From IMG/VR virus record IMGVR_UViG_3300026292_000003, positions 157,644 to 221,643 of that record: a stretch of 64,000 nucleotides of DNA. One strand, given 5' to 3'. The position numbers and the translations under genes were made by a program. Under the pieces are notes generated by a model. It was not told the DNA's origin and searched no databases. It saw only the letters and a program-made list of their open reading frames with translations. Positions 4,617 through 47,448 of the stretch are shown here, piece by piece (position 1 is the first letter of the stretch; each line of letters begins with the position of its first letter).

Positions 4617-4636
4617 AAAATTAATCCACAATTCGG

Positions 4637-4666: not shown

Positions 4667-4671
4667 TACAA

Positions 4672-4957
4672 GTAAGCGATGAAGCGACTTAACGGTAGAC
4701 TGGACCTCGGGGCAGTACCGAGCAGGTCCACCATAAACACTTTGTAGTTACCAGAACTAGATGGTACCCTAAAGTAAGGACAGACGCAGAGTGTTTATGA
4801 TGGGCCTGAATTAGGATCGACAGATATTATAGGGAAGTGGAGTTTACCGGGTGATTGCGTAATTGATCAAATTTTATAAACGCAGAAGATAATTTTGCAA
4901 TAGCGGCCTAATTTAGGCACGTAGGGGTGGGAACTACCTGGCAACAGAAGTGCCACT
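4672..4957 (+). ncRNA. ssrA: Two-piece (circularly permuted) tmRNA, tag AEDNFAIAA
   Basis: Acceptor piece ends CTCGG-GGCAGTA-CCGAG-CAGGTCC-ACCA (4733); hairpin intervening segment; coding piece starts GGGCCTG (4802), giving G3.U70; ATAAAC-GCA resume codon 4882, stop 4911; CCTGGCAACAGAA 3' motif. Confidence 0.92.
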
Positions 4958-5022
4958 GTATTCTTTAGAATTCAGTTACTACAAAAAGATAAACTTCTTA
5001 TCTTTATATCAAGGAAATATAT

Positions 5023-30962: not shown

Positions 30963-30965
30963 TAA

Positions 30966-31085
30966 ATGAGCAGAAAAACTTCCCCAAAACAAAAAATACA
31001 GAACCTTCGTTCTGCTAAAAAAAAGTTTAAAAGAAAACTTAATTTTAAAATTAAAAAAAGAAAACAAAGACAGGGTTTAGTATAA
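30966..31085 (+). CDS. Very basic 39-aa peptide
   Basis: MSRKTSPKQKIQNLRSAKKKFKRKLNFKIKKRKQRQGLV; TAATG-coupled to next gene. Confidence 0.55.
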   Translation: MSRKTSPKQKIQNLRSAKKKFKRKLNFKIKKRKQRQGLV

Positions 31086-31282
31086 TGGATATTGATAGAC
31101 TAAAAGTATTAGCAGGTGTAAATAAATCTGTTGCTGAATCTCCTGAAGGATCTAACATAAGTATTATTGGATCTGAAAAAGCAAAAATTCAAAGAGAACG
31201 TAAAATTAAACCAGGAACAGACGAATGGTTTAAATTGTGGTTTTCAAGACCACATCTTACTGGTGAAAAACCAACAAAATAG
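31085..31282 (+). CDS. Putative internal head protein
   Basis: MDIDRLKVLAGV leader; IKPGTDEWFKLWFSRP. Confidence 0.65.
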   Translation: MDIDRLKVLAGVNKSVAESPEGSNISIIGSEKAKIQRERKIKPGTDEWFKLWFSRPHLTGEKPTK

Positions 31283-31293
31283 GAGAACGCATA

Positions 31294-31680
31294 ATGGGTA
31301 CGGCAACCCTTTTACTTTTTGTACTAATGTGCAAACACGCGATTTGCGACTTGGCACTACAGTCATTTAGAACACCAACAGACAAATATAAGTATTTCAA
31401 TAAAGGTTTACATATACATTCATTAGATCACGGAATAGGTGCGTTCATTGTACTACTATTCTTTATAAACCCATTGTACGCCGCTCTATTTGCGTTTATT
31501 GACTATATTTTCCATTGGCATATTGACTTTATTAAAACAAATATTACTCGAAAATTTGGCTGGACAAAAGATGGTAAGGCTTTTTGGCGTCTACAAACAT
31601 TTGATCAAATTGCTCACTATGCAACGTATGCTCTAATAGTGTATTTGATATTTAAATGCCCTTTATGCATAATTAGATAA
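31294..31680 (+). CDS. DUF3307-like membrane protein
   Basis: KHAICDLALQ, HSLDHG, HWHIDFIK, DQIAH. Confidence 0.75.
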   Translation: MGTATLLLFVLMCKHAICDLALQSFRTPTDKYKYFNKGLHIHSLDHGIGAFIVLLFFINPLYAALFAFIDYIFHWHIDFIKTNITRKFGWTKDGKAFWRLQTFDQIAHYATYALIVYLIFKCPLCIIR

Positions 31681-31688
31681 ATACAGTT

Positions 31689-34600
31689 ATGCGTATAAAC
31701 GAAGTAGATAGAGAACTAACTCAGACTGAACTAGATCAACTAGAAACCTTTGCAGATAGATTATTTGCAAAGATAGGTATTGATGTAGAATTCACCCGAC
31801 ATTTTTTGGATAGAGTAAATGATGAACGTAATGTAAAACAAATTACGGCAGGTGAATTAACTCGTTTATTCAAACAAGAATACAAAAGATGGGGTAAACA
31901 AATTGCACAATTAGGTCCTGATACAGAAGCAGTATTAAAAGATCTTGCAACCGATGTTAATATACCCTTTGCCTTGCGTTGGGATTCTTCAAATAACGAA
32001 TTAGATCTTATTGCTAAAACAGTAATGAGAAAACCAGATTTCAAAACAAGTAATCAAGAATTTGCAGTAGAATATAAAACTTCAACAAACGATCTTAATA
32101 TTATAATGGAGGGATTACCTGCATTAAATAATGGTGGTGCGTTAGGAACAGGACTTTCTCCAGCTGAATTTAAAACAAGATATGGAATGTCTCCTGCTAA
32201 TGCAAACAAAACACTAGGAAATGTTATTGAATTATTTCCACAAGAAATTAAAAACAATCCAAGATTTAGACCTTTTATTAAACAATATATAATGAATCCA
32301 AAACAACTTGGAAATCTTCAAGCAGTTAATGATAATGTTATAGATCTTGATAAATGGAAAAAGAAAAAATTAAATAATAAATCTTGGAAAAACTTTTTTA
32401 AAAAAGCACCAATAAGAGCAGTAGGTTCGTTCCTTACTTTTCTATTAACACCTACACAATTAGGTGATGGTGAAATTCCAATGGACGAACGTATGGTTAT
32501 GGATACAATAAGCAAAATGTCAGATGCTGATCCACTAGCAATGATGGAACTTATAAAATCATCATATCCAGACACTTATCAAGATAATTGGTATTACAAA
32601 AATGCGGCTGAAAAATATTCAGATCAAGTTATAGCACAATTAGATGGAAAAGTGGATCCTTCTTTACAAAAAGCAGTAGAGAAAGTTAGAAAAGCAAAAG
32701 AGATGGAAAAGTGGAATGCTATGCCACTTGATCCAGGTTTACAAAAAGCATTAGATGCTTCTCAACCAAAAGTAGATTTTACTACAGGACCTGAATTGGG
32801 TCACCCTGCTCCAAAAATTGATCCAGCTCCAGATATGCCAGAGCCTGCTAATGATCCAGAACCAATTAAGCAACCAGAAGTAATTCCGTTTCCACAACCA
32901 AGACCAGAGAAACAACCTGAAGTTCCTGAGCCAGATAAAAAGCCAGAAGTTGAACCAGAAGGTCCAGAACAACCCAAAGAACCAGAAGTAAAACCAGATG
33001 AGAAACCAAAAGTTATTCCGTTTCCACCTGCACCCGAAGTTCCAGAAGTTCCTGAATTGCCAGATCCAACTACAACTCCAGAGCCAATTAAGACTCCAGA
33101 GCCAATTACAACTCCTGAGCCAATTAAGACTCCAGAACCAATTAAGCAACCAGAACCAGAAATTCAACCAGCTCCGGTTAGAGATCCAGATAAGGATCCA
33201 TTACCACAACCAGATTATGAGCCAAAAGATATTCCTATTGAAATACCTGAGCCAATTAAAATTGAGCCAGCACCGGAACCAGTTCCACAGCCAGAACCAA
33301 TTAAGCAACCAGAGCCAATTAAGCAACCAGAAATAGTGCCAACTCCAGGTAATGTTACAGCACCAGATGTTGGAATAATTCCGGCTCCATTACCAGTTCC
33401 AGCTCCAGCACCAGTTCCGCCAGGAATTCAACAAAAACCTTATAGAAGAAAAAGATGGGATACAGGTGGATACAATGACTTATACAAAACTAATTTATAT
33501 AGATGGACACAAAAATACGGAACATTTGAAAATGACAAATTAAATAAAATGTTACTTACACTTGGTGAAAACAGTATTAGTACTAGAACTAACGTTACAA
33601 CAAATAAAACTGGAAATGGTACAAACCAAACATTTAGTAAATATATTCAAAAGACTGGAAACGATGGCGGTACATCTTTAAGTAAAGTATCAAATCTAAA
33701 TAAGACAGCTAGTGGAACTACAGGTACTACTACAAAAAGATTTGTGAGACCAGGAGGAAGTGGAACAAACACAACATTTAACCACGGAACTGGAAAAGTT
33801 ACTAGAACTAATTTTCAATTAAAAGGTCCACAAAGCTGGGCATATGATAAGAAATTAAATTCATCAGTAACTAAAGAAGCTCAAGCAGTAGCAGGTGGAA
33901 AAGTACATAAAAATATTACAGGGCATAACTTAACTTGGAAAGGTGTTAAACAAGAGAGAATAGACTTTGAATTAATTAGTATTGATAATGCTACTAAAAG
34001 TGTTAAATTAGGAATACTTAAACCAGAAGAATTTGCAGGTGAAGTAGCTAACGTATCATTTAAAACACTTCGTAGAGGACCATTTGTAAAAACAGAATTA
34101 AATGAATCAATTATTATGGAAGGCGGAGCAATGCCAGGCGTTGGTGCAATCCATATAGATGAAATAAACCCAACACTAGAACAACTAGAAAAGTCATTAG
34201 GATTAGATTTAAAAAACTTTACATTAGGTAGTGTTGGTAAAAGACAATTTAGCGGTGATATTGATGTAGCGTTAAATTTGAAGCCTGAAGATCTTCCAGC
34301 GTTTGTTGAGAAGCTTAAAAAGAATCCTTTAATTAAGGATATAGCAAAATCAAGTGTTATAATGACAAAAGTACAAATTCAGAATTTTGATAAATCTAAA
34401 TCAGATGGAAGACCACGTACAGGTTTTGTACAATTAGATTTCATGCCAGGTGATCCAGGTTGGTTAAAAACTTACTTTCATTCACCAAGTGAAAAGGAAT
34501 CAAAATATAAAGGTGTGTTCCGTAACGTAATGGTAGCTACAATGGCCGCAGTACATAATAGAGATGACAGTGATGCTGAAGTGGAAGATGGAAGACCTTT

Positions 34601-34916
34601 AGAGAGTAGACGTTTTATGTGGAGCCCCACAGATGGATTAGTACGTGTTCTACGTACTCCAGTTCCAGCAAAGAATGGTAATGGTTATACCAAAAAGAAC
34701 CAAAACAAAGTTATAGATGGACCATGGAAACAAGCTGATGAAATCGCAAAACAACTTGGGTTAAATAGTGCAAAGGACTTAAACAGTTTTGAATCATTGT
34801 TAGATGCAATGAAAAAGAGCTATACTCAAGAAGAGCAGAAGAAAGTCATTGATAATTTAAAAGATAGTAAAGTAGTCCAAGACATTGGTTTACCTGACGA
34901 AATTAAAGATCTATAA
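31689..34916 (+). CDS. Multidomain protein: N-terminal HFLDR domain, Pro/Glu linker, C-terminal Pol-beta-type nucleotidyltransferase
   Basis: MRINEV leader; FTRHFLDRVND; PEPIKQ repeats; LGSVGK...SGDIDV...VQLDF. Confidence 0.75.
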   Translation: MRINEVDRELTQTELDQLETFADRLFAKIGIDVEFTRHFLDRVNDERNVKQITAGELTRLFKQEYKRWGKQIAQLGPDTEAVLKDLATDVNIPFALRWDSSNNELDLIAKTVMRKPDFKTSNQEFAVEYKTSTNDLNIIMEGLPALNNGGALGTGLSPAEFKTRYGMSPANANKTLGNVIELFPQEIKNNPRFRPFIKQYIMNPKQLGNLQAVNDNVIDLDKWKKKKLNNKSWKNFFKKAPIRAVGSFLTFLLTPTQLGDGEIPMDERMVMDTISKMSDADPLAMMELIKSSYPDTYQDNWYYKNAAEKYSDQVIAQLDGKVDPSLQKAVEKVRKAKEMEKWNAMPLDPGLQKALDASQPKVDFTTGPELGHPAPKIDPAPDMPEPANDPEPIKQPEVIPFPQPRPEKQPEVPEPDKKPEVEPEGPEQPKEPEVKPDEKPKVIPFPPAPEVPEVPELPDPTTTPEPIKTPEPITTPEPIKTPEPIKQPEPEIQPAPVRDPDKDPLPQPDYEPKDIPIEIPEPIKIEPAPEPVPQPEPIKQPEPIKQPEIVPTPGNVTAPDVGIIPAPLPVPAPAPVPPGIQQKPYRRKRWDTGGYNDLYKTNLYRWTQKYGTFENDKLNKMLLTLGENSISTRTNVTTNKTGNGTNQTFSKYIQKTGNDGGTSLSKVSNLNKTASGTTGTTTKRFVRPGGSGTNTTFNHGTGKVTRTNFQLKGPQSWAYDKKLNSSVTKEAQAVAGGKVHKNITGHNLTWKGVKQERIDFELISIDNATKSVKLGILKPEEFAGEVANVSFKTLRRGPFVKTELNESIIMEGGAMPGVGAIHIDEINPTLEQLEKSLGLDLKNFTLGSVGKRQFSGDIDVALNLKPEDLPAFVEKLKKNPLIKDIAKSSVIMTKVQIQNFDKSKSDGRPRTGFVQLDFMPGDPGWLKTYFHSPSEKESKYKGVFRNVMVATMAAVHNRDDSDAEVEDGRPLESRRFMWSPTDGLVRVLRTPVPAKNGNGYTKKNQNKVIDGPWKQADEIAKQLGLNSAKDLNSFESLLDAMKKSYTQEEQKKVIDNLKDSKVVQDIGLPDEIKDL

Positions 34917-34945
34917 TTGACTTTTTTCAATATATTAGTTATAAT
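34917..34945 (+). promoter_or_regulatory. sigma70-type promoter; ATG 5 nt after -10 (leaderless)
   Basis: TTGACT-N17-TATAAT-AAGCC-ATG. Confidence 0.7.
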
Positions 34946-34950
34946 AAGCC

Positions 34951-36129
34951 ATGCCAGAAAAATACTGCATATACACGAATAATTTCACCTTTGTAGACAA
35001 TGATGGCTATGTTGCGTTATGTTGTAAGAACTTAAAAAACAAACTAACACAATATCATATCAAAGATTACAAATTAAGCGAAATATGGAATAGCCCAGAA
35101 ATGCATTCCGTAAGGCAAGAAATTGCCAGCGGAGGAGAACCTATGGGTTGTTTTAAATGTTATGATCCAGAACGTGATGGTGTACGTAGTTTTAGACAAA
35201 AAGCATTAGGTATGATTAACAAAGGTGTACCCTTTGAAGATGAAAAAATACACGCATTAGATTTAAGACTAGGTAATGTATGCAACTTAAGATGTGTAAT
35301 GTGTTTCGCTGGTAATAGTAACAAAATTTTAAAAGATCATAAGCAAATGGCAGACCATTTTAAATGGAAAGAAGGTCGCCTAGAAAAAGAAGCAGAAAAG
35401 TATCACAAAAGCAATTATGACTGGAGTGATGATGAAAGAGCCTGGGAAAACATTATTACCAGTGTAGATAAAAATTTAAAACACGTTTACCTAGCAGGTG
35501 GTGAACCATTTTACTTAAAAAACTTTCCAACAACTGTAGAACGTTTAGGTACACTAGCACCAGATGCTAGATTTGTTATTAACTCAAACGGTACAAGACT
35601 ATTAAGAGAAAAAGATCTAAAACAACTGAAAAAGGTTGAGAATGTATTCATTAGATTTAGTGTTGACGGTTGGGGTGGTGCAGATGAATGGATTAGACAA
35701 GATACAAAATGGGAAGAAAAACTACAAGTAATGGATCAATATTACAAACACTTTAAATTAAGAGTTTGGGATATTACTGCAAATAGTTTAGGTGTTAGAC
35801 AAATACCAAAGCTAATAGAATATCTTTGGGAGCATTATCCTGAAGCAAAAGTACAAATTAGACCCGTAGTTAATAAGACAGAAATATTAATGGAAAATAT
35901 TCCTGATAGACTAAAAGCAAAGCCTTTGGAATTCTTTGAGAAACACAAAAATAAACTTGAAGGTGTTGATCATGTAATTAACGAGATGCGTAAACCATTC
36001 AATCCAGATCCTAACAGAGCAAAAACAGTTAAGCATTGGGTTGATTACTACGATAATACCGGCGTAGTAAAACTAGGTGACTTTGATCCAGAGCTTTCAG
36101 ATTGGATTCAAAGTAATGGGCAACAATAA
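34951..36129 (+). CDS. Radical SAM/twitch protein
   Basis: CNLRCVMC, AGGEP; N-terminal YC..LCC..CFKC. Confidence 0.9.
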   Translation: MPEKYCIYTNNFTFVDNDGYVALCCKNLKNKLTQYHIKDYKLSEIWNSPEMHSVRQEIASGGEPMGCFKCYDPERDGVRSFRQKALGMINKGVPFEDEKIHALDLRLGNVCNLRCVMCFAGNSNKILKDHKQMADHFKWKEGRLEKEAEKYHKSNYDWSDDERAWENIITSVDKNLKHVYLAGGEPFYLKNFPTTVERLGTLAPDARFVINSNGTRLLREKDLKQLKKVENVFIRFSVDGWGGADEWIRQDTKWEEKLQVMDQYYKHFKLRVWDITANSLGVRQIPKLIEYLWEHYPEAKVQIRPVVNKTEILMENIPDRLKAKPLEFFEKHKNKLEGVDHVINEMRKPFNPDPNRAKTVKHWVDYYDNTGVVKLGDFDPELSDWIQSNGQQ

Positions 36130-37333
36130 TTTTTGTAGTATACCTTGGATACATTCAGCAACTAAAACAAATGGTGCTAGTAGAGTATGTTGTTTGATGA
36201 GCAACTACGAACAAGGTAATGGCGGTCAAACAGGACATAACTTCAAAACAGATACTATAGAAGAAATACACAATAGCGAATATACTCGTAATCTTCGTAA
36301 GAAGTTTTTAAAGGGTTATAAACCAATTGAATGTAATACGTGTTGGGTTAAAGAGAAGAATGGTGGACAAAGTAGACGTATGTTTACTAATAAAATGTAC
36401 AAGCATTTAATTGACTATGAGAAAGCATTAAAGATCACAAAAGAAGATGGCAGTACAGATCAAATGCCAGTATATTGGGATTTACGTTTTGGTAACTTAT
36501 GTAATCTAAAGTGTGTTATGTGTGGACCACAAAGTAGCAGTATGTGGTATAAAGATTGGGCTCATATGTATGATACGGATCATTTTGAAGATTCAGGAGA
36601 AAAAATATTTTTTAAAGATAAAGGGGTTGACAGTAACGTATACGATTGGTATACAAGTAGCAACTTCTGGGAGCAAATGGAAAAGAATATAGATCAGCTA
36701 GAACATATATACCTAGTTGGTGGCGAGCCTATGCTTATTGAACAACATTATATATTTTTACAAAAGCTAATAGATAAAGGCGTAAGTCAAAATGTTACAT
36801 TGGAATATGATACAAATATTACTAACGTACACCAACGTGCTATTGAGCAATGGAGTAAGTTTAAAACATTAATGTTAAGAGTAAGTATAGATGATTATGG
36901 AGAACAAAATGATTATATACGTTTTCCTAGCAAATGGTATAAGTTAGATGAGAACATTAAACGTATTAAAGAATTAGTACCAAATACAAAAGTTGAAATA
37001 AGTATAACTTGGCAAATGCTTAATGCATATACATTTTTAAATTTAGTAGAGCATTTTAAAGATTACTTTATTAATATTAGAATATTGTCTGCACCAGAGA
37101 TATTTGATCCAAAACACTTACCAAAACAGGCTAAATTAGAGCTTATTGATATGTACAATAGTTCTGTACATAAAGATAAACTAAAGCATCTAATAAGCTA
37201 TCTAACAAATAACTTAAATAATAATAGATTATTATACCAAGAATCAGCAGATTTTCTAAATAGGCTAGATGTATTAAGAGGTACAGATTGGCCCAAAACG
37301 TTCAAGCAACTGCATAAATCGATAAATATATAA
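36116..37333 (+). CDS. Radical SAM/twitch protein
   Basis: CNLKCVMC, GGEP; FCSIPW..VCC..CNTC. Confidence 0.9.
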   Translation: MGNNNFCSIPWIHSATKTNGASRVCCLMSNYEQGNGGQTGHNFKTDTIEEIHNSEYTRNLRKKFLKGYKPIECNTCWVKEKNGGQSRRMFTNKMYKHLIDYEKALKITKEDGSTDQMPVYWDLRFGNLCNLKCVMCGPQSSSMWYKDWAHMYDTDHFEDSGEKIFFKDKGVDSNVYDWYTSSNFWEQMEKNIDQLEHIYLVGGEPMLIEQHYIFLQKLIDKGVSQNVTLEYDTNITNVHQRAIEQWSKFKTLMLRVSIDDYGEQNDYIRFPSKWYKLDENIKRIKELVPNTKVEISITWQMLNAYTFLNLVEHFKDYFINIRILSAPEIFDPKHLPKQAKLELIDMYNSSVHKDKLKHLISYLTNNLNNNRLLYQESADFLNRLDVLRGTDWPKTFKQLHKSINI

Positions 37334-37346
37334 AAGGAGCATACTT

Positions 37347-37799
37347 ATGAAAGTTAATGAAATAGTAACAGAACAAGGTGTTATAGTCAAAGGCGTAAAC
37401 ACAACAGTCGATGTTCAACCTGGTGAAACAGAGCGTCAGGCGGCTAAACTATTCCCAATGAATAAAGGTGGGAAACCAGCATCATTAATTAATGATAAAG
37501 TTCGTAAGAATAGCAATCCACACGTTCTTTTTAATATGGGCTTAACTGAAGAGCAAATACTACTATTAGAAAAAGTAGTTAAGCAATCAAAGCCTATGAA
37601 AGTATTAATGAACCTAGCAAGTAGAAATGATAATAATCCATTTCCAGTAAAAATGGGTGATATTATAGTTAATGTTACACCCGATACTGCTAGAAGAGTT
37701 ATACACCATTATTTTAATTCAAGTGATTTTAGACAAAACGAAATTGAGAAGATGTTAAATGATGCAATGGGATTTAAAAAACTTGTAAAGGAGATTTAA
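37347..37799 (+). CDS. Putative internal head protein
   Basis: GATAAATA, AAGGAG; MKVNEIVTE leader; GVNTTVDV. Confidence 0.65.
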   Translation: MKVNEIVTEQGVIVKGVNTTVDVQPGETERQAAKLFPMNKGGKPASLINDKVRKNSNPHVLFNMGLTEEQILLLEKVVKQSKPMKVLMNLASRNDNNPFPVKMGDIIVNVTPDTARRVIHHYFNSSDFRQNEIEKMLNDAMGFKKLVKEI

Positions 37800-37985
37800 A
37801 TGGACAAAAAGGAAATGTATACCGAGTATGGGTATAGAGGTACTGTTGAATTACAATTAGAAAAAGACCGTAACAAGAAATTAGTAGAAGATAACAAAAA
37901 GCTAGTTGAAGATAATAAAAAACTAATAGAAGCTAATGAGAAATTAATTGAGGACTTAAGAAAGGCTGAAGAGAAATTAATATGA
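37800..37985 (+). CDS. Small coiled-coil protein with NKKLVED heptad repeats
   Basis: AAGGAG SD; four heptad repeats. Confidence 0.6.
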   Translation: MDKKEMYTEYGYRGTVELQLEKDRNKKLVEDNKKLVEDNKKLIEANEKLIEDLRKAEEKLI

Positions 37986-38281
37986 GAATAAATGAAATTA
38001 TTACTAAAGAATTTGCTCCAACAAAAACAGCAAAGCAAGTGGCACACAATGCCCAAGCTGATGCCGCATTCTGGAAAAGCAAACTTGCACCTACTCCATT
38101 AAATAAAGATACAATGGTAATTACTGGTCCTAATGCACAAAACAAGATTGATAATAAAATTGCAAAAGCTAACAGTTTAAGTAAGGCGGCAAATGTAAAC
38201 CCTAATGCATTTACTAACAATTTACAAAAATCTTTTAGTAATAATACATCAAAATTTAAAACTAAATTTGGAAGATCATAA
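37982..38281 (+). CDS. Basic Asn/Lys-rich putative internal protein
   Basis: MRINEIITKE leader; no Glu afterwards. Confidence 0.65.
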   Translation: MRINEIITKEFAPTKTAKQVAHNAQADAAFWKSKLAPTPLNKDTMVITGPNAQNKIDNKIAKANSLSKAANVNPNAFTNNLQKSFSNNTSKFKTKFGRS

Positions 38282-38628
38282 TGAAAATAAGTGAAATTGT
38301 AACAAAGAAAACAGGTGCAGGTACAGTAAAAACTGTAGGTGGAAATGAGATTTCTAGAAGCACTCCTAATATAGGTGGACTACAAACAACTCAATATGCA
38401 GATGGATCTATCAAAAGTACATTCAATACTAACATAGGTGGAACATCTACAAATTTTACAAAAGTAAATGGAATTAATACTAACACAAATATGGCTTCTG
38501 GTAACCTTGCACTTAAAACAACAAACACTGGTAACAATAAATTTAAATTAAATAAAGCCACGTATAATATGGGCGGTGGACAAGGTACCCTAGTAGCACA
38601 GCCAGGTAAGTGGTCAGTAAGGAAGTAG
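38281..38628 (+). CDS. Basic Thr/Asn/Gly-rich putative internal protein
   Basis: MKISEIVTK leader. Confidence 0.65.
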   Translation: MKISEIVTKKTGAGTVKTVGGNEISRSTPNIGGLQTTQYADGSIKSTFNTNIGGTSTNFTKVNGINTNTNMASGNLALKTTNTGNNKFKLNKATYNMGGGQGTLVAQPGKWSVRK

Positions 38629-38630
38629 TT

Positions 38631-39005
38631 ATGAGAATAAATGAAATTACAAAAGAAGGATTTGACGACGCAGGGCAAAAAATTTACAAAGGTAATACAA
38701 CTCGTGTTGTTCATACACCAGTAGCAGATAAAAATATTAGTGTAGCAACCCAACGTATTAATAAATTTGCTAGTGATAGAGCCAGAGATGATCTAACTTA
38801 TAAAGGTGCTAAAATAACTGTACCAGGAACTAATCAAGCTATTGCTAAAGCTAAGAGTAATACAGTTACAGCATACAACAAGCAAGATAAAATAGATCAA
38901 AGATCAGGTGCAGGAACTTCTTACATTACTAAAGGCAAGCCAATTAAGTTTGGTAACAATGATAATGTTAAACTTAATATGTTCAGTAGTAAGGACAAAG
39001 AATGA
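38631..39005 (+). CDS. Basic putative internal protein
   Basis: MRINEITKE leader; AAGGA SD. Confidence 0.65.
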   Translation: MRINEITKEGFDDAGQKIYKGNTTRVVHTPVADKNISVATQRINKFASDRARDDLTYKGAKITVPGTNQAIAKAKSNTVTAYNKQDKIDQRSGAGTSYITKGKPIKFGNNDNVKLNMFSSKDKE

Positions 39006-39886
39006 AAATTAATCAAATCATAAATGAAGCAGTAGATTCAAAAGCTGAAATATATGTTGATATGGATGGCGTATTAGCAGACTTTTTTGGCGTATGGACT
39101 AAAATGGTTGGCGTTAAGAATTGGAAAGAAGTTAAAGACGTTGACTCTGCATTAGATATGATTAGAAGTCAAAAAGATTTTTGGATTAATTTACCACTTA
39201 CACCCAATGCCTCAAAGTTATTAAATTCAATTAAAAAAGTAAAAGGAAACTATACTATATTAAGTTCTCCTTTACCAGATGATCCAAATTCAGAACCACA
39301 AAAACGTGAATGGGTTAAAAAGATGCTTTCAGGTTTTGCACCTAAAAGAGTTATTATAACGCATAATAAAAGTGCGTATGCAAAACAACCTGATGGAACT
39401 CCTAATGTATTAATTGACGACTATGGAGATAATATTCAAAAATGGGAAAACGCAGGTGGAATAGGAATACAACACTCAGATAAAAATGCAGATGCAACAG
39501 TTTCAAAATTAGAAGAAGCTGATTTTGTTCATGCAATAAGCAGATTTATGAATAGAAATATACGTCCTGGTTTCTATAAAAGAGCCGCAAAAAAGTTTCA
39601 TGAATGGTTAAAAGGTCAAGCACCTTACAGACATAGCCTAGGATATTATGCTATGGAATGGGGTCATCAGTATAAACATATAGATTGGAGAAATCTAAAA
39701 CAAGCATATGAAGTTATGTTTGGAGATGATGTATTAGTAGAAGGCAAAGAACCTAAACTTGTAAAAGATAAAAAACAAAAGAATTTAAGCAGTATGGATA
39801 AACCTACAAAGTATGAAAGACGTAAAAATTATACTAAAGCTGATGAAGGTGAAGAGCCAAAACAAAAAAAAGAAAAGAAAAAATGA
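39002..39886 (+). CDS. HAD 5'(3')-deoxyribonucleotidase-like protein with leader and basic tail
   Basis: MKINQIINE; YVDMDGVLADF, ILSS, LIDD, WENAGGIGI. Confidence 0.85.
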   Translation: MKINQIINEAVDSKAEIYVDMDGVLADFFGVWTKMVGVKNWKEVKDVDSALDMIRSQKDFWINLPLTPNASKLLNSIKKVKGNYTILSSPLPDDPNSEPQKREWVKKMLSGFAPKRVIITHNKSAYAKQPDGTPNVLIDDYGDNIQKWENAGGIGIQHSDKNADATVSKLEEADFVHAISRFMNRNIRPGFYKRAAKKFHEWLKGQAPYRHSLGYYAMEWGHQYKHIDWRNLKQAYEVMFGDDVLVEGKEPKLVKDKKQKNLSSMDKPTKYERRKNYTKADEGEEPKQKKEKKK

Positions 39887-40077
39887 AAATAAAAGATGTA
39901 TTACAACTTCCAGCAATCAATATTGGTGATGAAGTCTATGTAGGTAGATTTAAAAATCGTAAAGCTACAGTAACAGGCTTTGGAGTTGATAATCATAATC
40001 AGCCTATATTAAAAACAAACAAGGGCGAACACAAGTTATTCAAGCCTAGAATAGCAAAATTAATGAAAGAAGAGTAG
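39883..40077 (+). CDS. Small SH3/KOW-like protein
   Basis: MKIKDV; INIGDEVYVGRFKN. Confidence 0.6.
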   Translation: MKIKDVLQLPAINIGDEVYVGRFKNRKATVTGFGVDNHNQPILKTNKGEHKLFKPRIAKLMKEE

Positions 40078-40088
40078 AGTTCAACTCT

Positions 40089-40469
40089 ATGAGAGTATCC
40101 TTAAAAAGACTACAACCCAATGATGCATTTCATTTAAGACGCATACTTGACAAAGATACTGCTCTTAAATGTTATTTAACATGGCCGTTTACAAAAGAGG
40201 TTGCAAAAACTTTCATTTCAGACTATAATACATATGGAATATGGATTAATAATGGAATATTAGTAGGAGCCATAGAAGTTAAAGAGTCATTGGAAACAGC
40301 ATATTTTGTTTCACCTACATATAGAAACAAAGGTATAGCTACAAAGGCTGTAACAGAGTGTAAAGATTTATTTGGAAAAAAACAACTATGGTGTGTTATT
40401 AATCCAAAAAATAAGGCAAGTTTGAAGGTAGCTGAAAAATCAAAATTACGAGTAAATTTTGTCAGCTAA
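40089..40469 (+). CDS. GNAT (RimJ/RimL-like) acetyltransferase
   Basis: YRNKGIATKA, NKASLKVAEK. Confidence 0.8.
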   Translation: MRVSLKRLQPNDAFHLRRILDKDTALKCYLTWPFTKEVAKTFISDYNTYGIWINNGILVGAIEVKESLETAYFVSPTYRNKGIATKAVTECKDLFGKKQLWCVINPKNKASLKVAEKSKLRVNFVS

Positions 40470-40478
40470 ATATCTTAT

Positions 40479-40715
40479 ATGTCTAATAAGAAGTTTAATA
40501 AAGACCTTATTAAAGATAACCATGGTCCAATGAATAGTGTCTCGAAAGACGACGCACTAGTCTGGGCAGGTGCTCCGCCAGTAAAGAATTTAAGTAACTT
40601 GGAGCCAAGAATTAGAAGAGAAGTATTAGCTAAAAAAAAGAAAGCTGAAACTAGTTCTAAAAAAGCTGATAGAAATATTAGCAAACAAATTAAAAGAAAG
40701 TATGAAGAGGAATAG
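40479..40715 (+). CDS. Basic hypothetical protein
   Basis: 78 aa; GCTAAATA upstream. Confidence 0.6.
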   Translation: MSNKKFNKDLIKDNHGPMNSVSKDDALVWAGAPPVKNLSNLEPRIRREVLAKKKKAETSSKKADRNISKQIKRKYEEE

Positions 40716-40717
40716 AT

Positions 40718-41479
40718 ATGGATTATAGTAAAGTTGATAAAGACGGAAAAGAGCTTAACACAGTTCCAAAAGCTAATCAAGCAAAACAAGCTGGTTACTA
40801 TGATAGATGGATTGAAAGTGGAAAGACTTGGGGAGAACCTACACCTGAAGATATCAAATGTGAATTACAACTAGATGCCTTATGTGACTTTGAACCACTT
40901 AAATGGGAAATTGATTTAGGTTGGTTTAAAAAAGAAATTAAAGCATATGATGGCAAATGGGTACCATATCTTCGTAGAGAAGGTGTTGTAAATAATAGAG
41001 AAGGATTATGTTTAGTAGGATTACCAGGTGATGAACCTTGGGATAGTTTAAGTATGCCAGAAGCAAGAAGACGTACTGGTAGAAAGTTAAGTGAATTAGA
41101 TTTTAACGAACCAACACAACTATACAAAGACTTAAAAAGTTTACATCCATTATTAGATTATTGGAAGCCTTTGGGACGTACGATGATAGTAAATTCTGGT
41201 GCAGGTGGCTGGTTTCCACCACATAAAGATCAACCTTTATTAACCAGAGATACGTTTAGAGTATGTGCATTTATATCAAACAACGTAACGCATGATGCGT
41301 ATGAATGGCATATGGACGGTCGTGTATGGCCTATTAAAGCAGGTGGAGTATATTATATTAATACTAAAAAGACGCACAGAACTCATGCCTGGAAAGATAA
41401 TAGTTTACATTTAGTAATGAATATACCTAAAACTTGGGAAAATGTACTCAAGCTAATGAGTGCAACCCTCAATTACTAG
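40718..41479 (+). CDS. 2OG-Fe(II) oxygenase (Asp/Asn beta-hydroxylase-like)
   Basis: GGWFPPHKD...YYINTKKTH; HxD...H triad. Confidence 0.75.
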   Translation: MDYSKVDKDGKELNTVPKANQAKQAGYYDRWIESGKTWGEPTPEDIKCELQLDALCDFEPLKWEIDLGWFKKEIKAYDGKWVPYLRREGVVNNREGLCLVGLPGDEPWDSLSMPEARRRTGRKLSELDFNEPTQLYKDLKSLHPLLDYWKPLGRTMIVNSGAGGWFPPHKDQPLLTRDTFRVCAFISNNVTHDAYEWHMDGRVWPIKAGGVYYINTKKTHRTHAWKDNSLHLVMNIPKTWENVLKLMSATLNY

Positions 41480-41510
41480 TGTATATTAAACAAATTAGAT
41501 AAATACTTGT

Positions 41511-42005
41511 ATGAAAGTATTTGATATCATAAACGAAGATGCTGACGGTGGAAGTTCAATGGCAGGTAACTTTGCTAGTGTTAGTTTTCCTTTGTTTGGC
41601 AAAAAGAAGCAGATTAGACGTGCAGTTGATCCTAAAGGATATTTAGGTGATGGCAAACTCAAGCTACCCAAAGTAGGTTATAACAAACCTGTTAAAGTAG
41701 ATAACGTAGCTGAGTCTGTAAACGAGAAGGTATACAAAAAGAACCCAGATGATCCTATGGATCCAGAAGTTCATGTGCCGGGTATGGCAGTATACAGTCT
41801 TAAAGGTCTTGAAAGAGATGTAAAAGGTATGTTTGAAGATTTAGCAAAACAAGCAGGTGATGGTAATTGGGAAAACATAGATTATTACTTACATCAGCAC
41901 GGAGTTTTATCAGCTAAAGTAAAAGCGATAGCAAGTACATATGAAGATTTAGAAAATACGAGAAAACGTGGAGGCAGAGCTTCTCAAGGTATTATAAAAA
42001 GGTAA
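41511..42005 (+). CDS. Putative internal head protein
   Basis: MKVFDIINE leader; internal AESVNE. Confidence 0.65.
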   Translation: MKVFDIINEDADGGSSMAGNFASVSFPLFGKKKQIRRAVDPKGYLGDGKLKLPKVGYNKPVKVDNVAESVNEKVYKKNPDDPMDPEVHVPGMAVYSLKGLERDVKGMFEDLAKQAGDGNWENIDYYLHQHGVLSAKVKAIASTYEDLENTRKRGGRASQGIIKR

Positions 42006-42010
42006 CGACA

Positions 42011-42802
42011 ATGACACCAAATGAACAAAAAATTGACAACACTTTTAATAGAGTGATGGACGATATAAACAGATTACAAAAAGCATTCCAACCAGGAAAA
42101 AATTTAGAAAAAGCTATCGCAGAAGTCGGTGGTGATATAGGTTGGTTAACAGAAATTAATAAATCTTTTGATGACTTATATGAATCATTAGAAGAAGGAC
42201 ATATGGGAGCAATAGCTCATTTACAAATGGAAGAATCAGCAAAAAAAGAAGTTAAAGAAAGTGTATTAGACTCTGCAGATGATGATGGGTTTATGGCACG
42301 TTCACAACTATACTTCCTAGCACGTGATGCAATTAATTTGCACGGCATGATTGATGATAGATCAGATTTAGAACCATGGGTTCAAAGTAAAATATCTCAA
42401 GCTTCAAAAGACATTGATGCAGTACGTCGTTATACTGAGTACAATGCAATGGAGCAAGAACAAGAACCAGAAGTACCAGCAGTAATACCAGGAGAAGAAC
42501 CACAAGAAGAAATGCCAACAATAGACGTACAAATGCCAGCAGGAGAATCAGTAGTAGAAGAAAAAGATCCTGAAACAGATTTCACAAGATGGTTAAAAGA
42601 CAAATACAATAAATCAGTGAGAGATCTAAAAGGTGATGAGTATACTAAAATGTCTAAAGAGTTTCAAGCATCTAAGAAAAAAGATGAAAGCATTAATGAA
42701 GAAATGAAATTTGATGACAAAAGAGATGCAGACCTAAAAGTCTTTGCAAAAGATTTGTATAAGAAGGCTGTTAAAAAAGCTAGAAGCAAAGCAAACAAAT
42801 AG
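42011..42802 (+). CDS. Putative internal head/core polyprotein
   Basis: MARSQL...LEPWVQSKIS module; multiple ESxxE linkers. Confidence 0.6.
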   Translation: MTPNEQKIDNTFNRVMDDINRLQKAFQPGKNLEKAIAEVGGDIGWLTEINKSFDDLYESLEEGHMGAIAHLQMEESAKKEVKESVLDSADDDGFMARSQLYFLARDAINLHGMIDDRSDLEPWVQSKISQASKDIDAVRRYTEYNAMEQEQEPEVPAVIPGEEPQEEMPTIDVQMPAGESVVEEKDPETDFTRWLKDKYNKSVRDLKGDEYTKMSKEFQASKKKDESINEEMKFDDKRDADLKVFAKDLYKKAVKKARSKANK

Positions 42803-42811
42803 GAGCATATC

Positions 42812-45637
42812 ATGAGAATACTAGACTTAGGCGAAGCTGGTTACGAAGGACAATCAGAAGCACAAAAACATTATTTTTATATTGAAGGCGATTACGATCA
42901 AGATCGTGGAATAAGTGAAAAAGATTGTGAAGAGATTACAAAACAACTTGTTGATATGGGATTAAAAGCTCATTGTCAACCAGATGAGTCTAGACAAGGT
43001 GTTGTAGAAATTAACACTTACAGTGGTCATACAACTATAGCAGATGCACTAGCTAAAGCTGGATACGAAGCTGATGCAGTTGGCGACTATGCAGGTTTTA
43101 CTTTTCATGAAGGTGAAGCAAATATTATAGCAGAAAATCCAAAAAAATTTACAAAAGCAGACTTTGACGCAAACGAAGACAAAAACTATCACACAGAAAA
43201 CGGTGTTGAATTAGCTAAAGCATTTGGTACTCCAGAAGAGATTGAGCAAATGGAACAAATTGCAAAAAATCATTATACTCGTGGACATATACTATCACAT
43301 GAAATAGATGCTCGTAGTGAAATTGTTGGAAAATATCTTCCATCATTAGAATCACAAGAAGAAGCAATGAGTAAAATGACTGAAGGCGATTTACAACCAG
43401 GTGATATAGAATTACTAAAACCAATGGTTGATATGAAACCAGAAGTATTAAAAGTTTATGCAAGAAATATTATAAAGAAATATCCACACCTTAAAGATAA
43501 CGTTATGAGAATGTTACCTGAATCACAAGAAGAAGATTTTATTGTTACATACAACGGAACACAAAAAGCAAATGATGCAGATTCTGCATTAGATATTTTA
43601 CAAGATAATGGATATGATGTAGAACGTGACTTTGATGGTACGTTTAAAGTATCTTATGAAGGTGTACAAAAAGCAGATAATATATATGACGTATTAGATT
43701 TATTACGTGATGAAGGTTATGAAGTACAAATTGCTGAACGTAAACTTTCTAAAGGTGAAGAAGATAAAAAAGAAGATATTGTAAAAGGCATGAAAAAAGA
43801 TAAAGACGGATTCAAAGAAAGATATGGCAAAGATGCAGAAGCAGTAATGTATGCGACAGCAACTAAATTAGCCAAAGAAGAAAATATAGTTGAAGACGAT
43901 GAACAAGCACTTGCACGTCAATTAATGCGTAAAGATGGAATTGATCCAGATAAAGTAAGTGACGGTGGAGTATTTTCCAAGTATCGTGAAAAGGCAAAGA
44001 AACAACTATCAGAAGATTTTATGGACGACAGAAAATATCAGAGCTTAGAAGAATTAAGAGACAAGTTAGTAGATATTGAAAAACATATTAAACGTTTAGG
44101 CGTTATGGACGGTGCCACAGAGTGGGAAGGTAAACACCTAACAGGTACAGCCGATATACACGACCAACTTACTACTATGTATAAAGATATTGCAGGACTA
44201 CAAGGTGCAGTAGGTAGAGCATTAAAAATAGTACCTGCAGAACAAAATCCATCTACAAAAGAATTTAAAAAGAAATATGGAATGGGCGAAGCAGACTCAA
44301 TGGGAATGAACAAGTATGGACTTGCGGCGGCAAAGAAAAATGGCAAGTTTATCTCATATAGAAATGGTAAAAAAACAGGTGAGTTTGATTCTATGGAAGA
44401 ACTTTCAAAACACCAACTTGATTTAATTAAAGATGAATCAGTAGAAGTAAAAGAAGGTGTAAATGATGTAGATAAAATTCATCAACTTACAGATGAGCTT
44501 TATAGAGAATTAGTTGATTTCCAAAACGAAGAGTTTGATGAAAACATTGAAGAGCTTATTGGACACCTAGCAGAATTCAAAGCTAAACTTGAAGGTGATA
44601 CAGGATCATTTTCAGAAGATACTATTAAAGAAGCATATATCAATAATACAAAAGATGCTATTGACATTTTAGGACGGCTACGAGGCAAAGGTAAGCAGTT
44701 AGAAAGAGGCCAACAAGAATACAAAGGTAACCTACCAAATGAGTACGTTAATGATGTATGGGACGTATGGACTTGGATGGAAAGTAAACTTGGTGGTGGA
44801 GCAGAAGCAAATGATCCAAAACTTAAAGCAATTATGCAAGAAGTATTTTGGCTCAGAGGCGAAGCTAAAAAAATGGAAAGAAATTACAGTCCAGATCTAG
44901 AGCGTTCAGAAGATCATATGGGAGCGGCAGGTTTTGGAAATATGGTAGTGAATACTTTATATCCATTAATGCAATGGCTAGATATGAATGATAGTAAGTT
45001 AAACGAATTTGATATTAAAAAATCATTTAATAATATTGCTAACAACGTTAAAAACACTATGTCAAATGTTGTTAAAGGAAATCCATTAAGAACTAAAATG
45101 AATAAAAATGCAAATAAAAATGGACCAAGTTTAGCAAGACAGATTAATTGGGGTGGAAAGTATGAGTCAAAAGATGATATAAACGAACTTGATACATTTG
45201 CACCAAAAACAGATTACATAAAAGGTCCAGGTGGCGAGTTTTATAAAATTGAATATCGTAACAATAGTGGACTAACAGGTAAACGTAAAGATGATACGGC
45301 TAGATTCGTTTCAGTGAATCCTGCAAGTGATCAAGAAGTATCTGCATTAAATTTAGATGATATGATTGCTAAAGGTAATACAAGTATTCATCAAGGACAC
45401 GATCATCAAGGTGGATTACCTTGGAGTGATAAAGACATTGCTGTTTATGCATATGGCGGCGATGATTATGAAGAAGGAATTCCTAACAATGCAAAAATGA
45501 AATTAATTAAAGTAATGACTACAGAAGCTGAAAAGAAAAGGAAAGCAGAGCTAGGCACGAAAATACGTTCGTGGAGAGAAACAAAAGCTGACATGAAGAA
45601 GAAAATTGAAGCTTCTAAACCAGGAGATAAAAAATGA
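42812..45637 (+). CDS. Large acidic modular putative internal polyprotein
   Basis: MRILDLGE leader; modules separated by xxE linkers; RYG...VMYATATK module. Confidence 0.65.
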   Translation: MRILDLGEAGYEGQSEAQKHYFYIEGDYDQDRGISEKDCEEITKQLVDMGLKAHCQPDESRQGVVEINTYSGHTTIADALAKAGYEADAVGDYAGFTFHEGEANIIAENPKKFTKADFDANEDKNYHTENGVELAKAFGTPEEIEQMEQIAKNHYTRGHILSHEIDARSEIVGKYLPSLESQEEAMSKMTEGDLQPGDIELLKPMVDMKPEVLKVYARNIIKKYPHLKDNVMRMLPESQEEDFIVTYNGTQKANDADSALDILQDNGYDVERDFDGTFKVSYEGVQKADNIYDVLDLLRDEGYEVQIAERKLSKGEEDKKEDIVKGMKKDKDGFKERYGKDAEAVMYATATKLAKEENIVEDDEQALARQLMRKDGIDPDKVSDGGVFSKYREKAKKQLSEDFMDDRKYQSLEELRDKLVDIEKHIKRLGVMDGATEWEGKHLTGTADIHDQLTTMYKDIAGLQGAVGRALKIVPAEQNPSTKEFKKKYGMGEADSMGMNKYGLAAAKKNGKFISYRNGKKTGEFDSMEELSKHQLDLIKDESVEVKEGVNDVDKIHQLTDELYRELVDFQNEEFDENIEELIGHLAEFKAKLEGDTGSFSEDTIKEAYINNTKDAIDILGRLRGKGKQLERGQQEYKGNLPNEYVNDVWDVWTWMESKLGGGAEANDPKLKAIMQEVFWLRGEAKKMERNYSPDLERSEDHMGAAGFGNMVVNTLYPLMQWLDMNDSKLNEFDIKKSFNNIANNVKNTMSNVVKGNPLRTKMNKNANKNGPSLARQINWGGKYESKDDINELDTFAPKTDYIKGPGGEFYKIEYRNNSGLTGKRKDDTARFVSVNPASDQEVSALNLDDMIAKGNTSIHQGHDHQGGLPWSDKDIAVYAYGGDDYEEGIPNNAKMKLIKVMTTEAEKKRKAELGTKIRSWRETKADMKKKIEASKPGDKK

Positions 45638-45885
45638 TATTTAATTGGATTAAAAACATATTAGGTGTTGGTGAAAAGCCTTTGGTTTTAACTGACGAAG
45701 TAGAGCCAAAGAAAAATGAGATTAAACCTATTATCGTAAAACCTTCATTTAAAACTAAAAAAGATTTGTCAAGTATGACAAAAGGTAGACTTGAAGAAGT
45801 TGGTAGAATCTATGGTATAGAATTAGATAAAAGATTAACTAAAGCTAAACTAGTAGATCAACTTTGGAAACAGTTAAAGAAATAA
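45634..45885 (+). CDS. Small protein with Rho-N/HeH-like C-terminal motif
   Basis: LSSMTKGRLEEVGRIYGIELDKRLTKAKLVDQL. Confidence 0.6.
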   Translation: MIFNWIKNILGVGEKPLVLTDEVEPKKNEIKPIIVKPSFKTKKDLSSMTKGRLEEVGRIYGIELDKRLTKAKLVDQLWKQLKK

Positions 45886-46077
45886 ATGATGGCTGAATTC
45901 GTTAGAAAGCCAGCAGAGCATACTAACGGACATTGCCAAAATTGTGGACATCCTAGCCATTGTGGTGGAAGTCTACAACAAGAAGTAAGAGATTATGCTT
46001 GTGATAGTAAAGATAATAATAACACACGTATGATTGAAGTCTGTAAATGTTGCAGATGTAAAAACTGTACTAAATAG
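45886..46077 (+). CDS. Cys/His-rich Zn-binding small protein
   Basis: CQNCGHPSHC...CKCCRCKNC. Confidence 0.65.
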   Translation: MMAEFVRKPAEHTNGHCQNCGHPSHCGGSLQQEVRDYACDSKDNNNTRMIEVCKCCRCKNCTK

Positions 46078-46093
46078 TACAAAGGACTAAATT

Positions 46094-46237
46094 ATGAAGT
46101 TACATAAAGGTTTTGTAGAACACGAAACTACGCCGAAGAAGACAAGCATTGGGAACAATAAATCCAGACATAAAACTTCTTCTATGAATAAGCATAAGAG
46201 GCGTTCATACAAGCCGTATAGAGGACAAGGAAAATGA
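46094..46237 (+). CDS. Basic 47-aa phage peptide ending YRGQGK
   Basis: AAGGA SD; ATGA overlap with next gene; missed by track. Confidence 0.7.
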   Translation: MKLHKGFVEHETTPKKTSIGNNKSRHKTSSMNKHKRRSYKPYRGQGK

Positions 46238-47436: not shown

Positions 47437-47448
47437 TAGGAGAGAATA

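What the first reader, a model, noticed from the sequence alone, without database searches (positions are those of the whole stretch)
37982..39005. Glu-free basic payloads, consistent with evading a Glu-specific head protease
Seen: after the leader, 37982 has 89 residues with no Glu, 38281 has none after residue 23, and 38631 has none in 114 residues until its last residue. Similar Glu-free Asn/Thr/Lys/Gly-rich blocks lie between xxE sites inside larger ORFs: 102 aa at 33570-33875 between LGE and TKE, and blocks in 41511 and 42812. Glu is otherwise abundant in this proteome. Inference: these are mature peptides that survive maturation cleavage, possibly DNA-coating or anti-defence proteins of unknown family.
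Basis: partly seen in the sequence, partly recalled or inferred. Interest (0 to 1): 0.65.

Follow-up and report, generated by a model that had tools for sequence, protein, structure and literature searches.

The report
Glutamate-free basic phage head cargo proteins
Three back-to-back small genes of a marine jumbo T4-related phage encode basic proteins that carry a T4-style capsid-targeting leader and then almost no glutamate, a bias kept in all their relatives, which fits cargo that must survive a glutamate-specific head protease; no experiment yet shows this.

Summary
ORFs 37982, 38281 and 38631 have Glu only in the leader (residues 5/10, 5/23, 5/9) plus the last residue of 38631, against 6.8% Glu in the proteome. 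Similar Glu-free runs are not rare in this genome (22 runs of 89 aa or more, 9 expected), so raw run length is weak evidence. The stronger evidence comes from relatives:
- Families B and C keep Glu out through 138 and 249 inferred substitutions (0 and 5 Glu gains; 10 and 22 expected).
- Asp stays near 11% in family C.
- Fused relatives have about 6% Glu outside the core, and a Glu sits 2-7 residues before the core start.

The genome encodes a gp21-type protease. The leader closely resembles the T4 gp24 propeptide that gp21 removes.

The general claim does not hold. Most leader-bearing proteins, and T4 IPI/II/III, have normal Glu. Only poorly folding basic modules are Glu-free.

Best reading: these are T4 internal-protein analogues, about 10-12.5 kDa and pI about 10, protease-proofed by lacking Glu. 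Virion presence, DNA coating and anti-defence roles are untested. I rate this a new variant of a known kind.

The parts
37982..38281 (+). Family A gene: 99 aa. Leader is aa 1-10, ending in TKE. The predicted mature part is 89 aa, 9.6 kDa, pI 10.5, with no Glu.
   Evidence: Four close homologues (86-91% identity) also have Glu only at 5 and 10. No Pfam or PHROG hit.
38281..38628 (+). Family B gene: 115 aa. It has the leader plus a conserved second Glu at GNE-23. The predicted mature part is 92 aa, 9.6 kDa, pI 10.6, 58% N/T/S/G/Q, with no Glu. Its start overlaps the stop of the previous gene (TAATG).
   Evidence: Nine homologues (47-90% identity) have Glu only at position 5 and in the GNE motif. 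Glu gains: 0 observed against 10.2 expected over 138 substitutions. AF2 pLDDT is 51.
38631..39005 (+). Family C gene: 124 aa. Leader is aa 1-9. The core starts at DDAGQKIY. The predicted mature part is 115 aa, 12.6 kDa, pI 9.9, with 10 Asp and 1 Glu (the C-terminal residue).
   Evidence: In 18 aligned homologues the core has Glu 11/1963 and Asp 215/1963. Glu gains: 5 observed against 22.1 expected. AF2 pLDDT is 53.
29727..48528 (+). Cassette of 12 ORFs that share the N-terminal leader M-[KR]-[ILVF]-x-[DENQS]-[ILVF], usually followed by a Glu at residues 8-11. Starts are at 29727, 31689, 37347, 37982, 38281, 38631, 39002, 39883, 41511, 42812, 46234 and 47449.
   Evidence: 15 of 280 ORFs in the genome carry the leader, 12 of them here. 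Codons differ between the leaders, so the conservation is at protein level. The leader resembles the T4 gp24 N-terminus MAKINELLRE.
33570..33875 (+). 102-aa Glu-free, N/T/G/S/K-rich block (aa 628-729) inside leader-bearing ORF 31689-34916, bounded by LGE and TKE.
30132..30437 (+). 102-aa Glu-free basic block (aa 136-237) inside leader-bearing ORF 29727-30962. It includes four PVKTNNV repeats.
41538..41711 (+). 58-aa Glu-free block (aa 10-67) after the leader of ORF 41511, bounded by INE and VAE. On its own it is not significant.
   Evidence: Short standalone relatives of 52-69 aa with 0-1 Glu after residue 12 occur in IMG/VR loci L022, L027, L049 and L053.
45008..45163 (+). 52-aa Glu-free basic block (aa 733-784) in ORF 42812, bounded by LNE and KYE. 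On its own it is not significant.

Best explanation

Proposed steps:
1. Each protein carries an N-terminal capsid-targeting-type leader (consensus M-K/R-I-N-E-I-I-T-x-E). The leader takes it into the prohead core. This is inferred.
2. The phage's gp21-family serine protease cuts after the leader's Glu. The protease gene is shown. Cleavage after Glu is known for the family. Cleavage here is inferred.
3. The released 9.6-12.6 kDa, pI about 10 polypeptides have no confident fold. They stay intact because they offer no Glu to a strictly Glu-specific enzyme.
4. The same protease shreds the Glu-rich scaffold and the hyper-acidic core protein (16% and 21% Glu).
5. The basic products then remain with the packaged DNA and are probably ejected with it.

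The same Glu-free modules also occur fused into larger leader-bearing proteins. There they are bounded by Glu-containing, leader-like linkers, so those proteins may be cut into pieces.
For: - Protease: Peptidase_S77 at G000:52933-53361, 88 bits; phrog_207, 2e-61. It is flanked by a leader-bearing 64-aa core protein, a 306-aa protein with 21% Glu, a scaffold with 16% Glu and a gp23-type capsid protein.
- gp21 cuts after Glu at L/I-x-E, and Asp at the site blocks processing (PMC9026906).
- The leader matches the T4 gp24 propeptide pattern KINE-hydrophobic-hydrophobic-x-basic-E. gp24 is annotated as cleaved by gp21.
- Glu exclusion is conserved. The family C core has 0.56% Glu and 11% Asp in 18 homologues. 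Glu gains are 5 against 22.1 expected for C and 0 against 10.2 for B. Asp gains are normal.
- Eight ordinary neighbouring gene families give Glu-gain ratios of 0.52-1.10.
- In distant fused homologues the core has 18/891 Glu and the rest has 119/1978.
- Every family C member whose N-terminus is present has a Glu 2-7 residues before the core start, whatever lies upstream.
- P0003 joins core C to a further module through the linker IKTNE-ITTG. In L064 the same module stands alone as MKINE-ITTG.
- AF2 gives pLDDT 51-53 for B and C.
- The mature forms are small and basic, like T4 IPs.
- Cassette-type replacement occurs among relatives.
- Basic Glu-free runs of 80 aa or more are about 3 times enriched in leader ORFs of IMG/VR.
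Against: - No virion proteomics exists for this phage or any relative. Families B and C have no match in GenBank phage isolates.
- T4 IPs and most leader-bearing proteins here have normal Glu, so Glu-freeness is not required for survival.
- Glu-free, Asp-containing runs of similar length occur in non-leader structural proteins of the same genome, so composition alone can produce them.
- A few Glu are tolerated in family C cores, for example TNE-L in seven homologues.
- The second leader Glu often has Thr, not Leu or Ile, at P3.
- The low AF2 confidence may reflect shallow alignments rather than disorder.
- The protease-substrate co-fold gave no answer.
Confidence: 0.45

Rival explanations
1. 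They are packaged internal or DNA-associated proteins, but the lack of Glu is a by-product of what they are. Basic, N/T/S/G-rich, beta-rich or disordered DNA binders have little use for Glu, a helix former with negative charge. On this reading the protease does not shape the composition.
For: - Glu-free runs of 89 aa or more are 2.4 times more frequent than random across the genome. Most lie in non-leader structural proteins with about 11% Asp.
- Family B is predicted all-beta.
- Families A and B are also poor in Asp (1-3%).
- T4 IPs survive gp21 with normal Glu.
- The leader-bearing class as a whole is not Glu-poor.
Against: - Family C keeps 11% Asp and a predicted helical hairpin, yet has 0.56% Glu.
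- Glu gains are 4-fold or more below the calibrated expectation, while Asp gains are normal.
- The depletion stops sharply at module edges, which are marked by Glu.
- Basic Glu-free blocks are enriched specifically in leader-bearing ORFs.
Confidence: 0.27
2. The shared N-terminus is not a capsid-targeting or processing signal. It might be a translation-initiation or expression cassette, or a tag for another pathway. On this reading the proteins act in the infected cell and are never in heads, and the Glu bias is unrelated to the protease.
For: - No direct evidence of packaging exists.
- Mobile regulatory cassettes are known to shuffle genes in T4-type phages (PMC2839356, seen only as a title and abstract).
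- The cassette includes enzymes (GNAT, nucleotidase, radical SAM neighbours) that need not be virion proteins.
Against: - The leaders are conserved at protein level with different codons, and the upstream DNA is not conserved.
- The leader also sits on the small core protein next to the protease.
- It resembles the T4 gp24 propeptide.
- Internal leader-like linkers in fusions make no sense for a translation-start element.
Confidence: 0.15
3. Chance, or not real genes: AT-rich spurious ORFs that happen to lack GAA/GAG codons.
For: The ORFs are small, have no family hit and give low-confidence folds.
Against: - 4, 9 and more than 30 homologues exist in independent marine metagenomes, with invariant motifs and indel-free cores.
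- The reading frames are tightly coupled.
- The antisense ORFs have no such support.
Confidence: 0.02

Closest known systems
[quoted passage not shown]
   Same: - Several unrelated small basic proteins (8-20 kDa in T4; 9.6-12.6 kDa here) share a roughly 10-residue N-terminal leader ending in Glu.
- The genome has a gp21-type protease.
- The genes lie in a variable cassette with replacement among relatives.
- In T4 the mature proteins stay in the head with the DNA and are ejected.
   Different: - There is no sequence similarity of the mature parts, and the leader differs from MKTYQEFIAE.
- T4 IPs have normal Glu (5.7-8.4%) and IPI* is folded, whereas these are essentially Glu-free and give no confident fold.
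- The cassette is much larger (12 leader genes in 19 kb, including proteins of 941 and 1075 aa).
- Packaging here is inferred, not shown.
T4 gp24 vertex-protein propeptide (MAKINELLRE, removed by gp21)
   Same: The leader here (for example MRINEIITKE, MKVNEIVTE) shares the K-I-N-E-hydrophobic-hydrophobic-x-x-E pattern.
   Different: In T4 this propeptide sits on a shell protein, not on internal cargo. P3 of the second Glu is often Thr here rather than Leu. The similarity covers 10 residues only.
Inner-body and ejection proteins of phiKZ, 201phi2-1 and SPN3US, processed at S/A/G-x-E
   Same: - Jumbo phages with many head-internal proteins cut after Glu by a diverged gp21 homologue.
- Multiple cleavage sites occur in the propeptides.
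- Paralogues have conserved N-termini (PMC5694885, PMC10052503).
- Family B has a conserved G-N-E site at residue 23.
   Different: - Their propeptides are often longer than 100 aa.
- The protease here is much closer to those of PA5oct, Phosso, SCTP-2 and T4-type phages.
- I found no report of Glu-free mature regions in the papers read.
Adenovirus core proteins VII and mu, and protamine-like DNA condensers (works-like comparison only, from general knowledge)
   Same: Small, very basic, poorly structured proteins that are processed by the virion protease and remain on the packaged genome.
   Different: Unrelated viruses, protease and cleavage rule. No homology.

Membership tests
T4-type CTS-dependent internal head proteins | A short N-terminal leader shared by otherwise unrelated proteins of the same phage | tested here: met
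   15 of 280 ORFs carry the leader, 12 of them in one cassette. The three ORFs align only in the leader.
T4-type CTS-dependent internal head proteins | The genome encodes a gp21-family (Peptidase_S77) prohead protease with scaffold and core genes | tested here: met
T4-type CTS-dependent internal head proteins | The leader ends in a gp21 cleavage motif (L/I-x-E) | tested here: inconclusive
   I-N-E at residue 5 fits the motif. The second Glu fits in several cassette members (INE, LGE, LKE, VTE) but is T-K-E in ORFs 37982 and 38631 and G-N-E in 38281. The specificity of this protease is unknown.
T4-type CTS-dependent internal head proteins | Small, basic mature protein | tested here: met
   9.6-12.6 kDa, pI 9.9-10.6, net charge +9 to +11.
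T4-type CTS-dependent internal head proteins | Located in a variable region with gene replacement among related phages | tested here: met
   L064 lacks family A and has another leader module in place of C. Families A and B were found in IMG/VR only on a 100%-identical contig, while C is in five other related contigs.
T4-type CTS-dependent internal head proteins | Physically present in proheads and virions, N-terminally processed, and ejected with the DNA | not testable with these tools
   No isolate or proteome is available.
T4 IPI / IPII / IPIII sequence families | Sequence homology of the mature region | tested here: not met
   No PHROG or Pfam family and no PDB relative.
OB-fold tRNA_anti-like (PF12869), considered for ORF 38631 | Score above the Pfam gathering threshold, and a beta-barrel fold | tested here: not met
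   17.5 bits against a cut-off of 23.5. The AF2 model is a low-confidence helical hairpin.

The most novel reading that the evidence does not exclude
Glu-exclusion may be an evolved protease-proofing rule for unstructured capsid cargo in a large, uncultured group of marine jumbo T4-related phages. Basic Glu-free modules, standalone or strung together through leader-like Glu linkers, would be cut out by the prohead protease into DNA-coating or ejected peptides. If so, cargo and cleavage maps could be read directly from sequence, as Glu-free blocks between Glu-marked joints.
Probability: 0.3. Interest if true: 0.7.

Novelty: new variant of a known kind. Interest (0 to 1): 0.55.

Why it matters
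If true, it gives a simple sequence rule for predicting which phage proteins ride inside the head and where they are cut: a leader, then a Glu-free basic block, with Glu at the joints. That would apply to uncultured jumbo phages, where no proteomics exists. It would also explain how unstructured cargo coexists with a protease that destroys the scaffold. And it suggests a design constraint for CTS-based protein packaging: flexible cargo must lack accessible Glu. The three protein families themselves are new, with no Pfam, PHROG or PDB relative, and are candidates for ejected host-takeover or anti-defence factors.

Tried and rejected
- Paralogy of the three ORFs: none beyond the leader.
- Similarity of family B to the 33570 block: none.
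- Pfam and PHROGs: nothing except a sub-threshold tRNA_anti-like hit for 38631. I rejected it.
- GenBank phage DNA and protein searches: no match.
- PDB profile searches: nothing.
- ESM Atlas look-alikes: only unnamed viral clusters below the useful score.
- AF2 on both family alignments: pLDDT 51-53. This is too low for a fold search, so none was run.
- Protease plus ORF 38631 co-fold: no answer, score 0.00. This is not evidence either way.
- Test for general Glu depletion of leader-bearing proteins: negative.
- Test for depletion of [LI]xE in leader proteins of this genome: only suggestive. Leader proteins show 34 observed against 37.8 shuffled, while other proteins are enriched at 711 against 585.

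Full report
**Context**

The window is bases 157,644-221,643 of a 221,643-bp IMG/VR virus record (about 60% complete). A contig holding the same proteins reaches 329,779 bp. GC is about 33%. Homologues come from marine metagenomes, including Tara.

The genome encodes the following head-assembly genes:
- a T4 gp21-family prohead protease (Peptidase_S77, 88 bits; phrog_207, 2e-61);
- next to it, a 64-aa core protein, a 306-aa protein with 21% Glu and a coiled-coil scaffold with 16% Glu;
- a gp23-type major capsid protein.

The protease is closest (65-71% identity) to those of jumbo T4-related phages: Sinorhizobium phage Phosso, Pseudomonas phage PA5oct, Salicola phage SCTP-2 and Vibrio phage 2.275.O.

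**Observation**

The counts are exactly as reported.

| ORF | Length | Glu positions | Glu-free stretch |
|---|---|---|---|
| 37982 | 99 aa | 5, 10 | 89 aa |
| 38281 | 115 aa | 5, 23 | 92 aa |
| 38631 | 124 aa | 5, 9, 124 | 114 aa |

Proteome Glu is 6.8%. The 102-aa block at 33570-33875 is real. The blocks in 41511 (58 aa) and 42812 (52 aa) are short and not significant alone.

A uniform model gives P values of 3e-4 to 2e-3 per ORF. That model is too generous:
- The genome has 22 Glu-free runs of 89 aa or more against 9.3 expected. Most lie in non-leader structural proteins that still contain about 11% Asp.
- Empirically, 12 of 232 ORFs have 2.5% Glu or less. Three of them being adjacent has P of about 0.02.

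The three ORFs are not paralogues beyond the leader. They are translationally coupled, with TAATG and ATGA overlaps.

**The leader**

Fifteen of 280 ORFs begin M-[KR]-[ILVF]-x-[DENQS]-[ILVF]. Twelve of these lie in window 29727-48528, and one is the small core protein beside the protease. Codons differ among the leaders and the upstream DNA is not conserved, so selection acts on the peptide.

The leader closely resembles the T4 gp24 N-terminus MAKINELLRE. That protein is annotated as cleaved by gp21, and it is cited as having a 10-20-residue propeptide (PMC5694885).

For T4, the following is established (PMC9026906):
- gp21 cuts after Glu at L/I-x-E.
- Ten N-terminal residues suffice to target cargo into the head.
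- Asp in place of the Glu blocks processing but not targeting.

The capsid protein here has an L-S-E site at residue 41, ahead of a conserved N-arm.

**Homologues: the key test**

Family A has four close relatives, all with Glu at 5 and 10 only.

Family B has nine relatives at 47-90% identity. All have Glu only at residue 5 and in a conserved GNE site.

Family C has more than 30 relatives.
- In 18 aligned sequences the core has Glu 11/1963 (0.56%) and Asp 215/1963 (11%).
- Parsimony counts on FastTree trees give 249 substitutions in the C core. Glu gains are 5 against 22.1 expected from BLOSUM62 exchange (P = 1e-5), and Asp gains are 15 against 11.3.
- Family B has 138 substitutions. Glu gains are 0 against 10.2 expected (P = 4e-5).
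- The same test on eight ordinary neighbouring gene families of the same phages gives Glu-gain ratios of 0.52-1.10, pooled about 0.81. The depletion therefore remains about 4-fold or more after calibration.
- The few tolerated Glu (TNE-L, GGE-Q, KGE-P, KFE-P, KLE-L) lack a hydrophobic P3 residue.

**Modularity**

The HMM search of 1.8 billion representatives found family C cores embedded in larger, mostly leader-bearing proteins.
- In these proteins the core has 18/891 Glu, several at the edges of the matched region. The remainder has 119/1978 (6.0%).
- Every member with an intact N-terminus has a Glu 2-7 residues, most often 3, before the DD-x-GQKIY core start. This holds whether the upstream part is a 9-aa leader or a domain of 45-115 aa.
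- P0017 joins the N-module of ORF 37347 to the C core.
- P0039 joins leader, C core and a second Glu-free block that has a short family-B-like motif (judged by eye), followed by a Glu-normal domain.
- P0003 joins C through the linker IKTNE-ITTG to a module that stands alone in L064 as MKINE-ITTG.
- L064, a close relative, lacks family A and carries that module in place of C. This is a cassette-type replacement, as at the T4 IP loci.

Glu-freeness is not a property of leader-bearing proteins in general.
- 12 of 15 in this genome have 4.5-10% Glu.
- 85 leader ORFs sampled from IMG/VR have 6.5% Glu against 6.3% in 701 controls.
- In loci with several leader ORFs the figures are 7.0% against 6.4%.
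- T4 IPI, IPII and IPIII have 8.4%, 7.0% and 5.7%.

What is enriched in leader ORFs is the presence of basic, non-hydrophobic Glu-free blocks of 80 aa or more: 11/68 against 23/492, Fisher P = 0.001.

AF2 on the family alignments gives pLDDT 52.7 for C (a helical hairpin at 60-70, the rest below 50) and 51.1 for B. The Glu-free modules therefore have no confident fold, although the alignments are shallow.

The coherent reading is that folded cargo tolerates Glu, while flexible basic cargo must lack it to survive a Glu-specific protease that is meanwhile degrading the Glu-rich scaffold.

**Mechanism proposed, and what is shown**

- Shown: the composition, its conservation, the leader, the protease gene, the modular fusions, and the basic character of the products (9.6-12.6 kDa, pI 9.9-10.6).
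- Established for the family: cleavage after Glu, and leader-dependent targeting.
- Inferred: that these leaders target and are cleaved, that the products stay in the head and are ejected, and that protease pressure causes the Glu exclusion.
- No evidence: DNA coating and anti-defence roles.

**Rivals**

1. The composition is a by-product of a basic, beta-rich or disordered protein. Genome-wide Glu-free runs in structural proteins and the Asp-poverty of families A and B support this. The 11% Asp in family C, the calibrated Glu-gain deficit and the sharp Glu-marked boundaries argue against it.
2. The leader is not a capsid signal. Protein-level conservation, its presence on the core protein beside the protease, the likeness to gp24 and the internal leader-like linkers argue against this.
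3. Chance or non-genes. The conservation of the homologues excludes this.

**Novelty**

The kind is known: CTS-type internal head proteins. The three families are new, with no Pfam, PHROG, PDB or GenBank-phage relative. The conserved Glu exclusion, specific to poorly folding cargo modules, was not reported in the papers read. I rate it a new variant of a known kind, with moderate interest.

**Not done**

- The protease-substrate co-fold gave no answer.
- No fold search was run, because the models are of low confidence.

Noticed in passing
window 4617-5002 (+): The phage carries a tmRNA gene of the permuted alphaproteobacterial type (Rfam alpha_tmRNA 97 bits, tmRNA_permuted 98 bits; ARAGORN tag AEDNFAIAA). 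Three tRNAs lie nearby: Arg-ACG at 6808, Arg-TCT at 10201 and Leu-TAA at 10284. With 33% GC and a marine origin, this hints at an alphaproteobacterial host.
   Followed up: partly
window 41511-42005 (+), aa 10-40; compare the capsid gene at G000:54624-55787: After its leader, ORF 41511 has the segment GGSSMAGNFASVSFP...RRAV. This resembles the N-arm of the phage's own gp23-type capsid protein just after its L-S-E site (SGTTMAGNVASL...RRV). Short standalone versions (52-69 aa, 0-1 Glu after residue 12) recur in IMG/VR loci L022, L027, L049 and L053. It may be a capsid N-arm mimic.
   Followed up: no
window 29727-30962 (+), C-terminus; also P0036, P0039, P0040 and L004:5716-6555: A Cys-containing C-terminal domain (phrog_7595; ...RHNCDNPGPKTKARYWSC..) ends ORF 29727. 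It is also fused downstream of family C cores in distant homologues, so it is another shuffled cargo module.
   Followed up: partly
window 30150-30240 and 32700-33500 (+): ORF 29727 contains four tandem PVKTNNV repeats. ORF 31689 contains a long Pro/Glu/Lys-rich PEP-type repeat region (EPIKQPE and similar) upstream of its Glu-free block.
   Followed up: no
window 34951-37333 and 50766-51926 (+): There are three radical SAM proteins. In the two at 34951-37333 the SPASM-type Fe-S domain lies at the N-terminus. They sit inside or beside the leader cassette but have no leader themselves.
   Followed up: no
window 20464-22725 (+) and 51923-54616 (+): A ClpB/Hsp104-like double AAA+ protein (AAA_2 at 5e-57, ClpB_D2-small) and a family B DNA polymerase.
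   Followed up: no
IMG/VR loci L011-L129: The exact leader MK/RINEI, followed by a Glu at residues 8-10, starts ORFs in many unrelated-looking IMG/VR contigs, several with 3-8 leader ORFs per 10 kb. The leader system therefore seems widespread in environmental phages.
   Followed up: partly
whole genome G000: [LI]-x-E is enriched over shuffled expectation in ordinary proteins (711 against 585) but not in leader-bearing proteins (34 against 37.8). This is a weak hint of motif avoidance in packaged proteins.
   Followed up: partly
window 37800-37985 (+): A 61-aa, 18% Glu coiled-coil ORF with KKLVEDN repeats sits directly upstream of the Glu-free trio, overlapping by ATGA. It is conserved in L064 and has no leader.
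   Followed up: no
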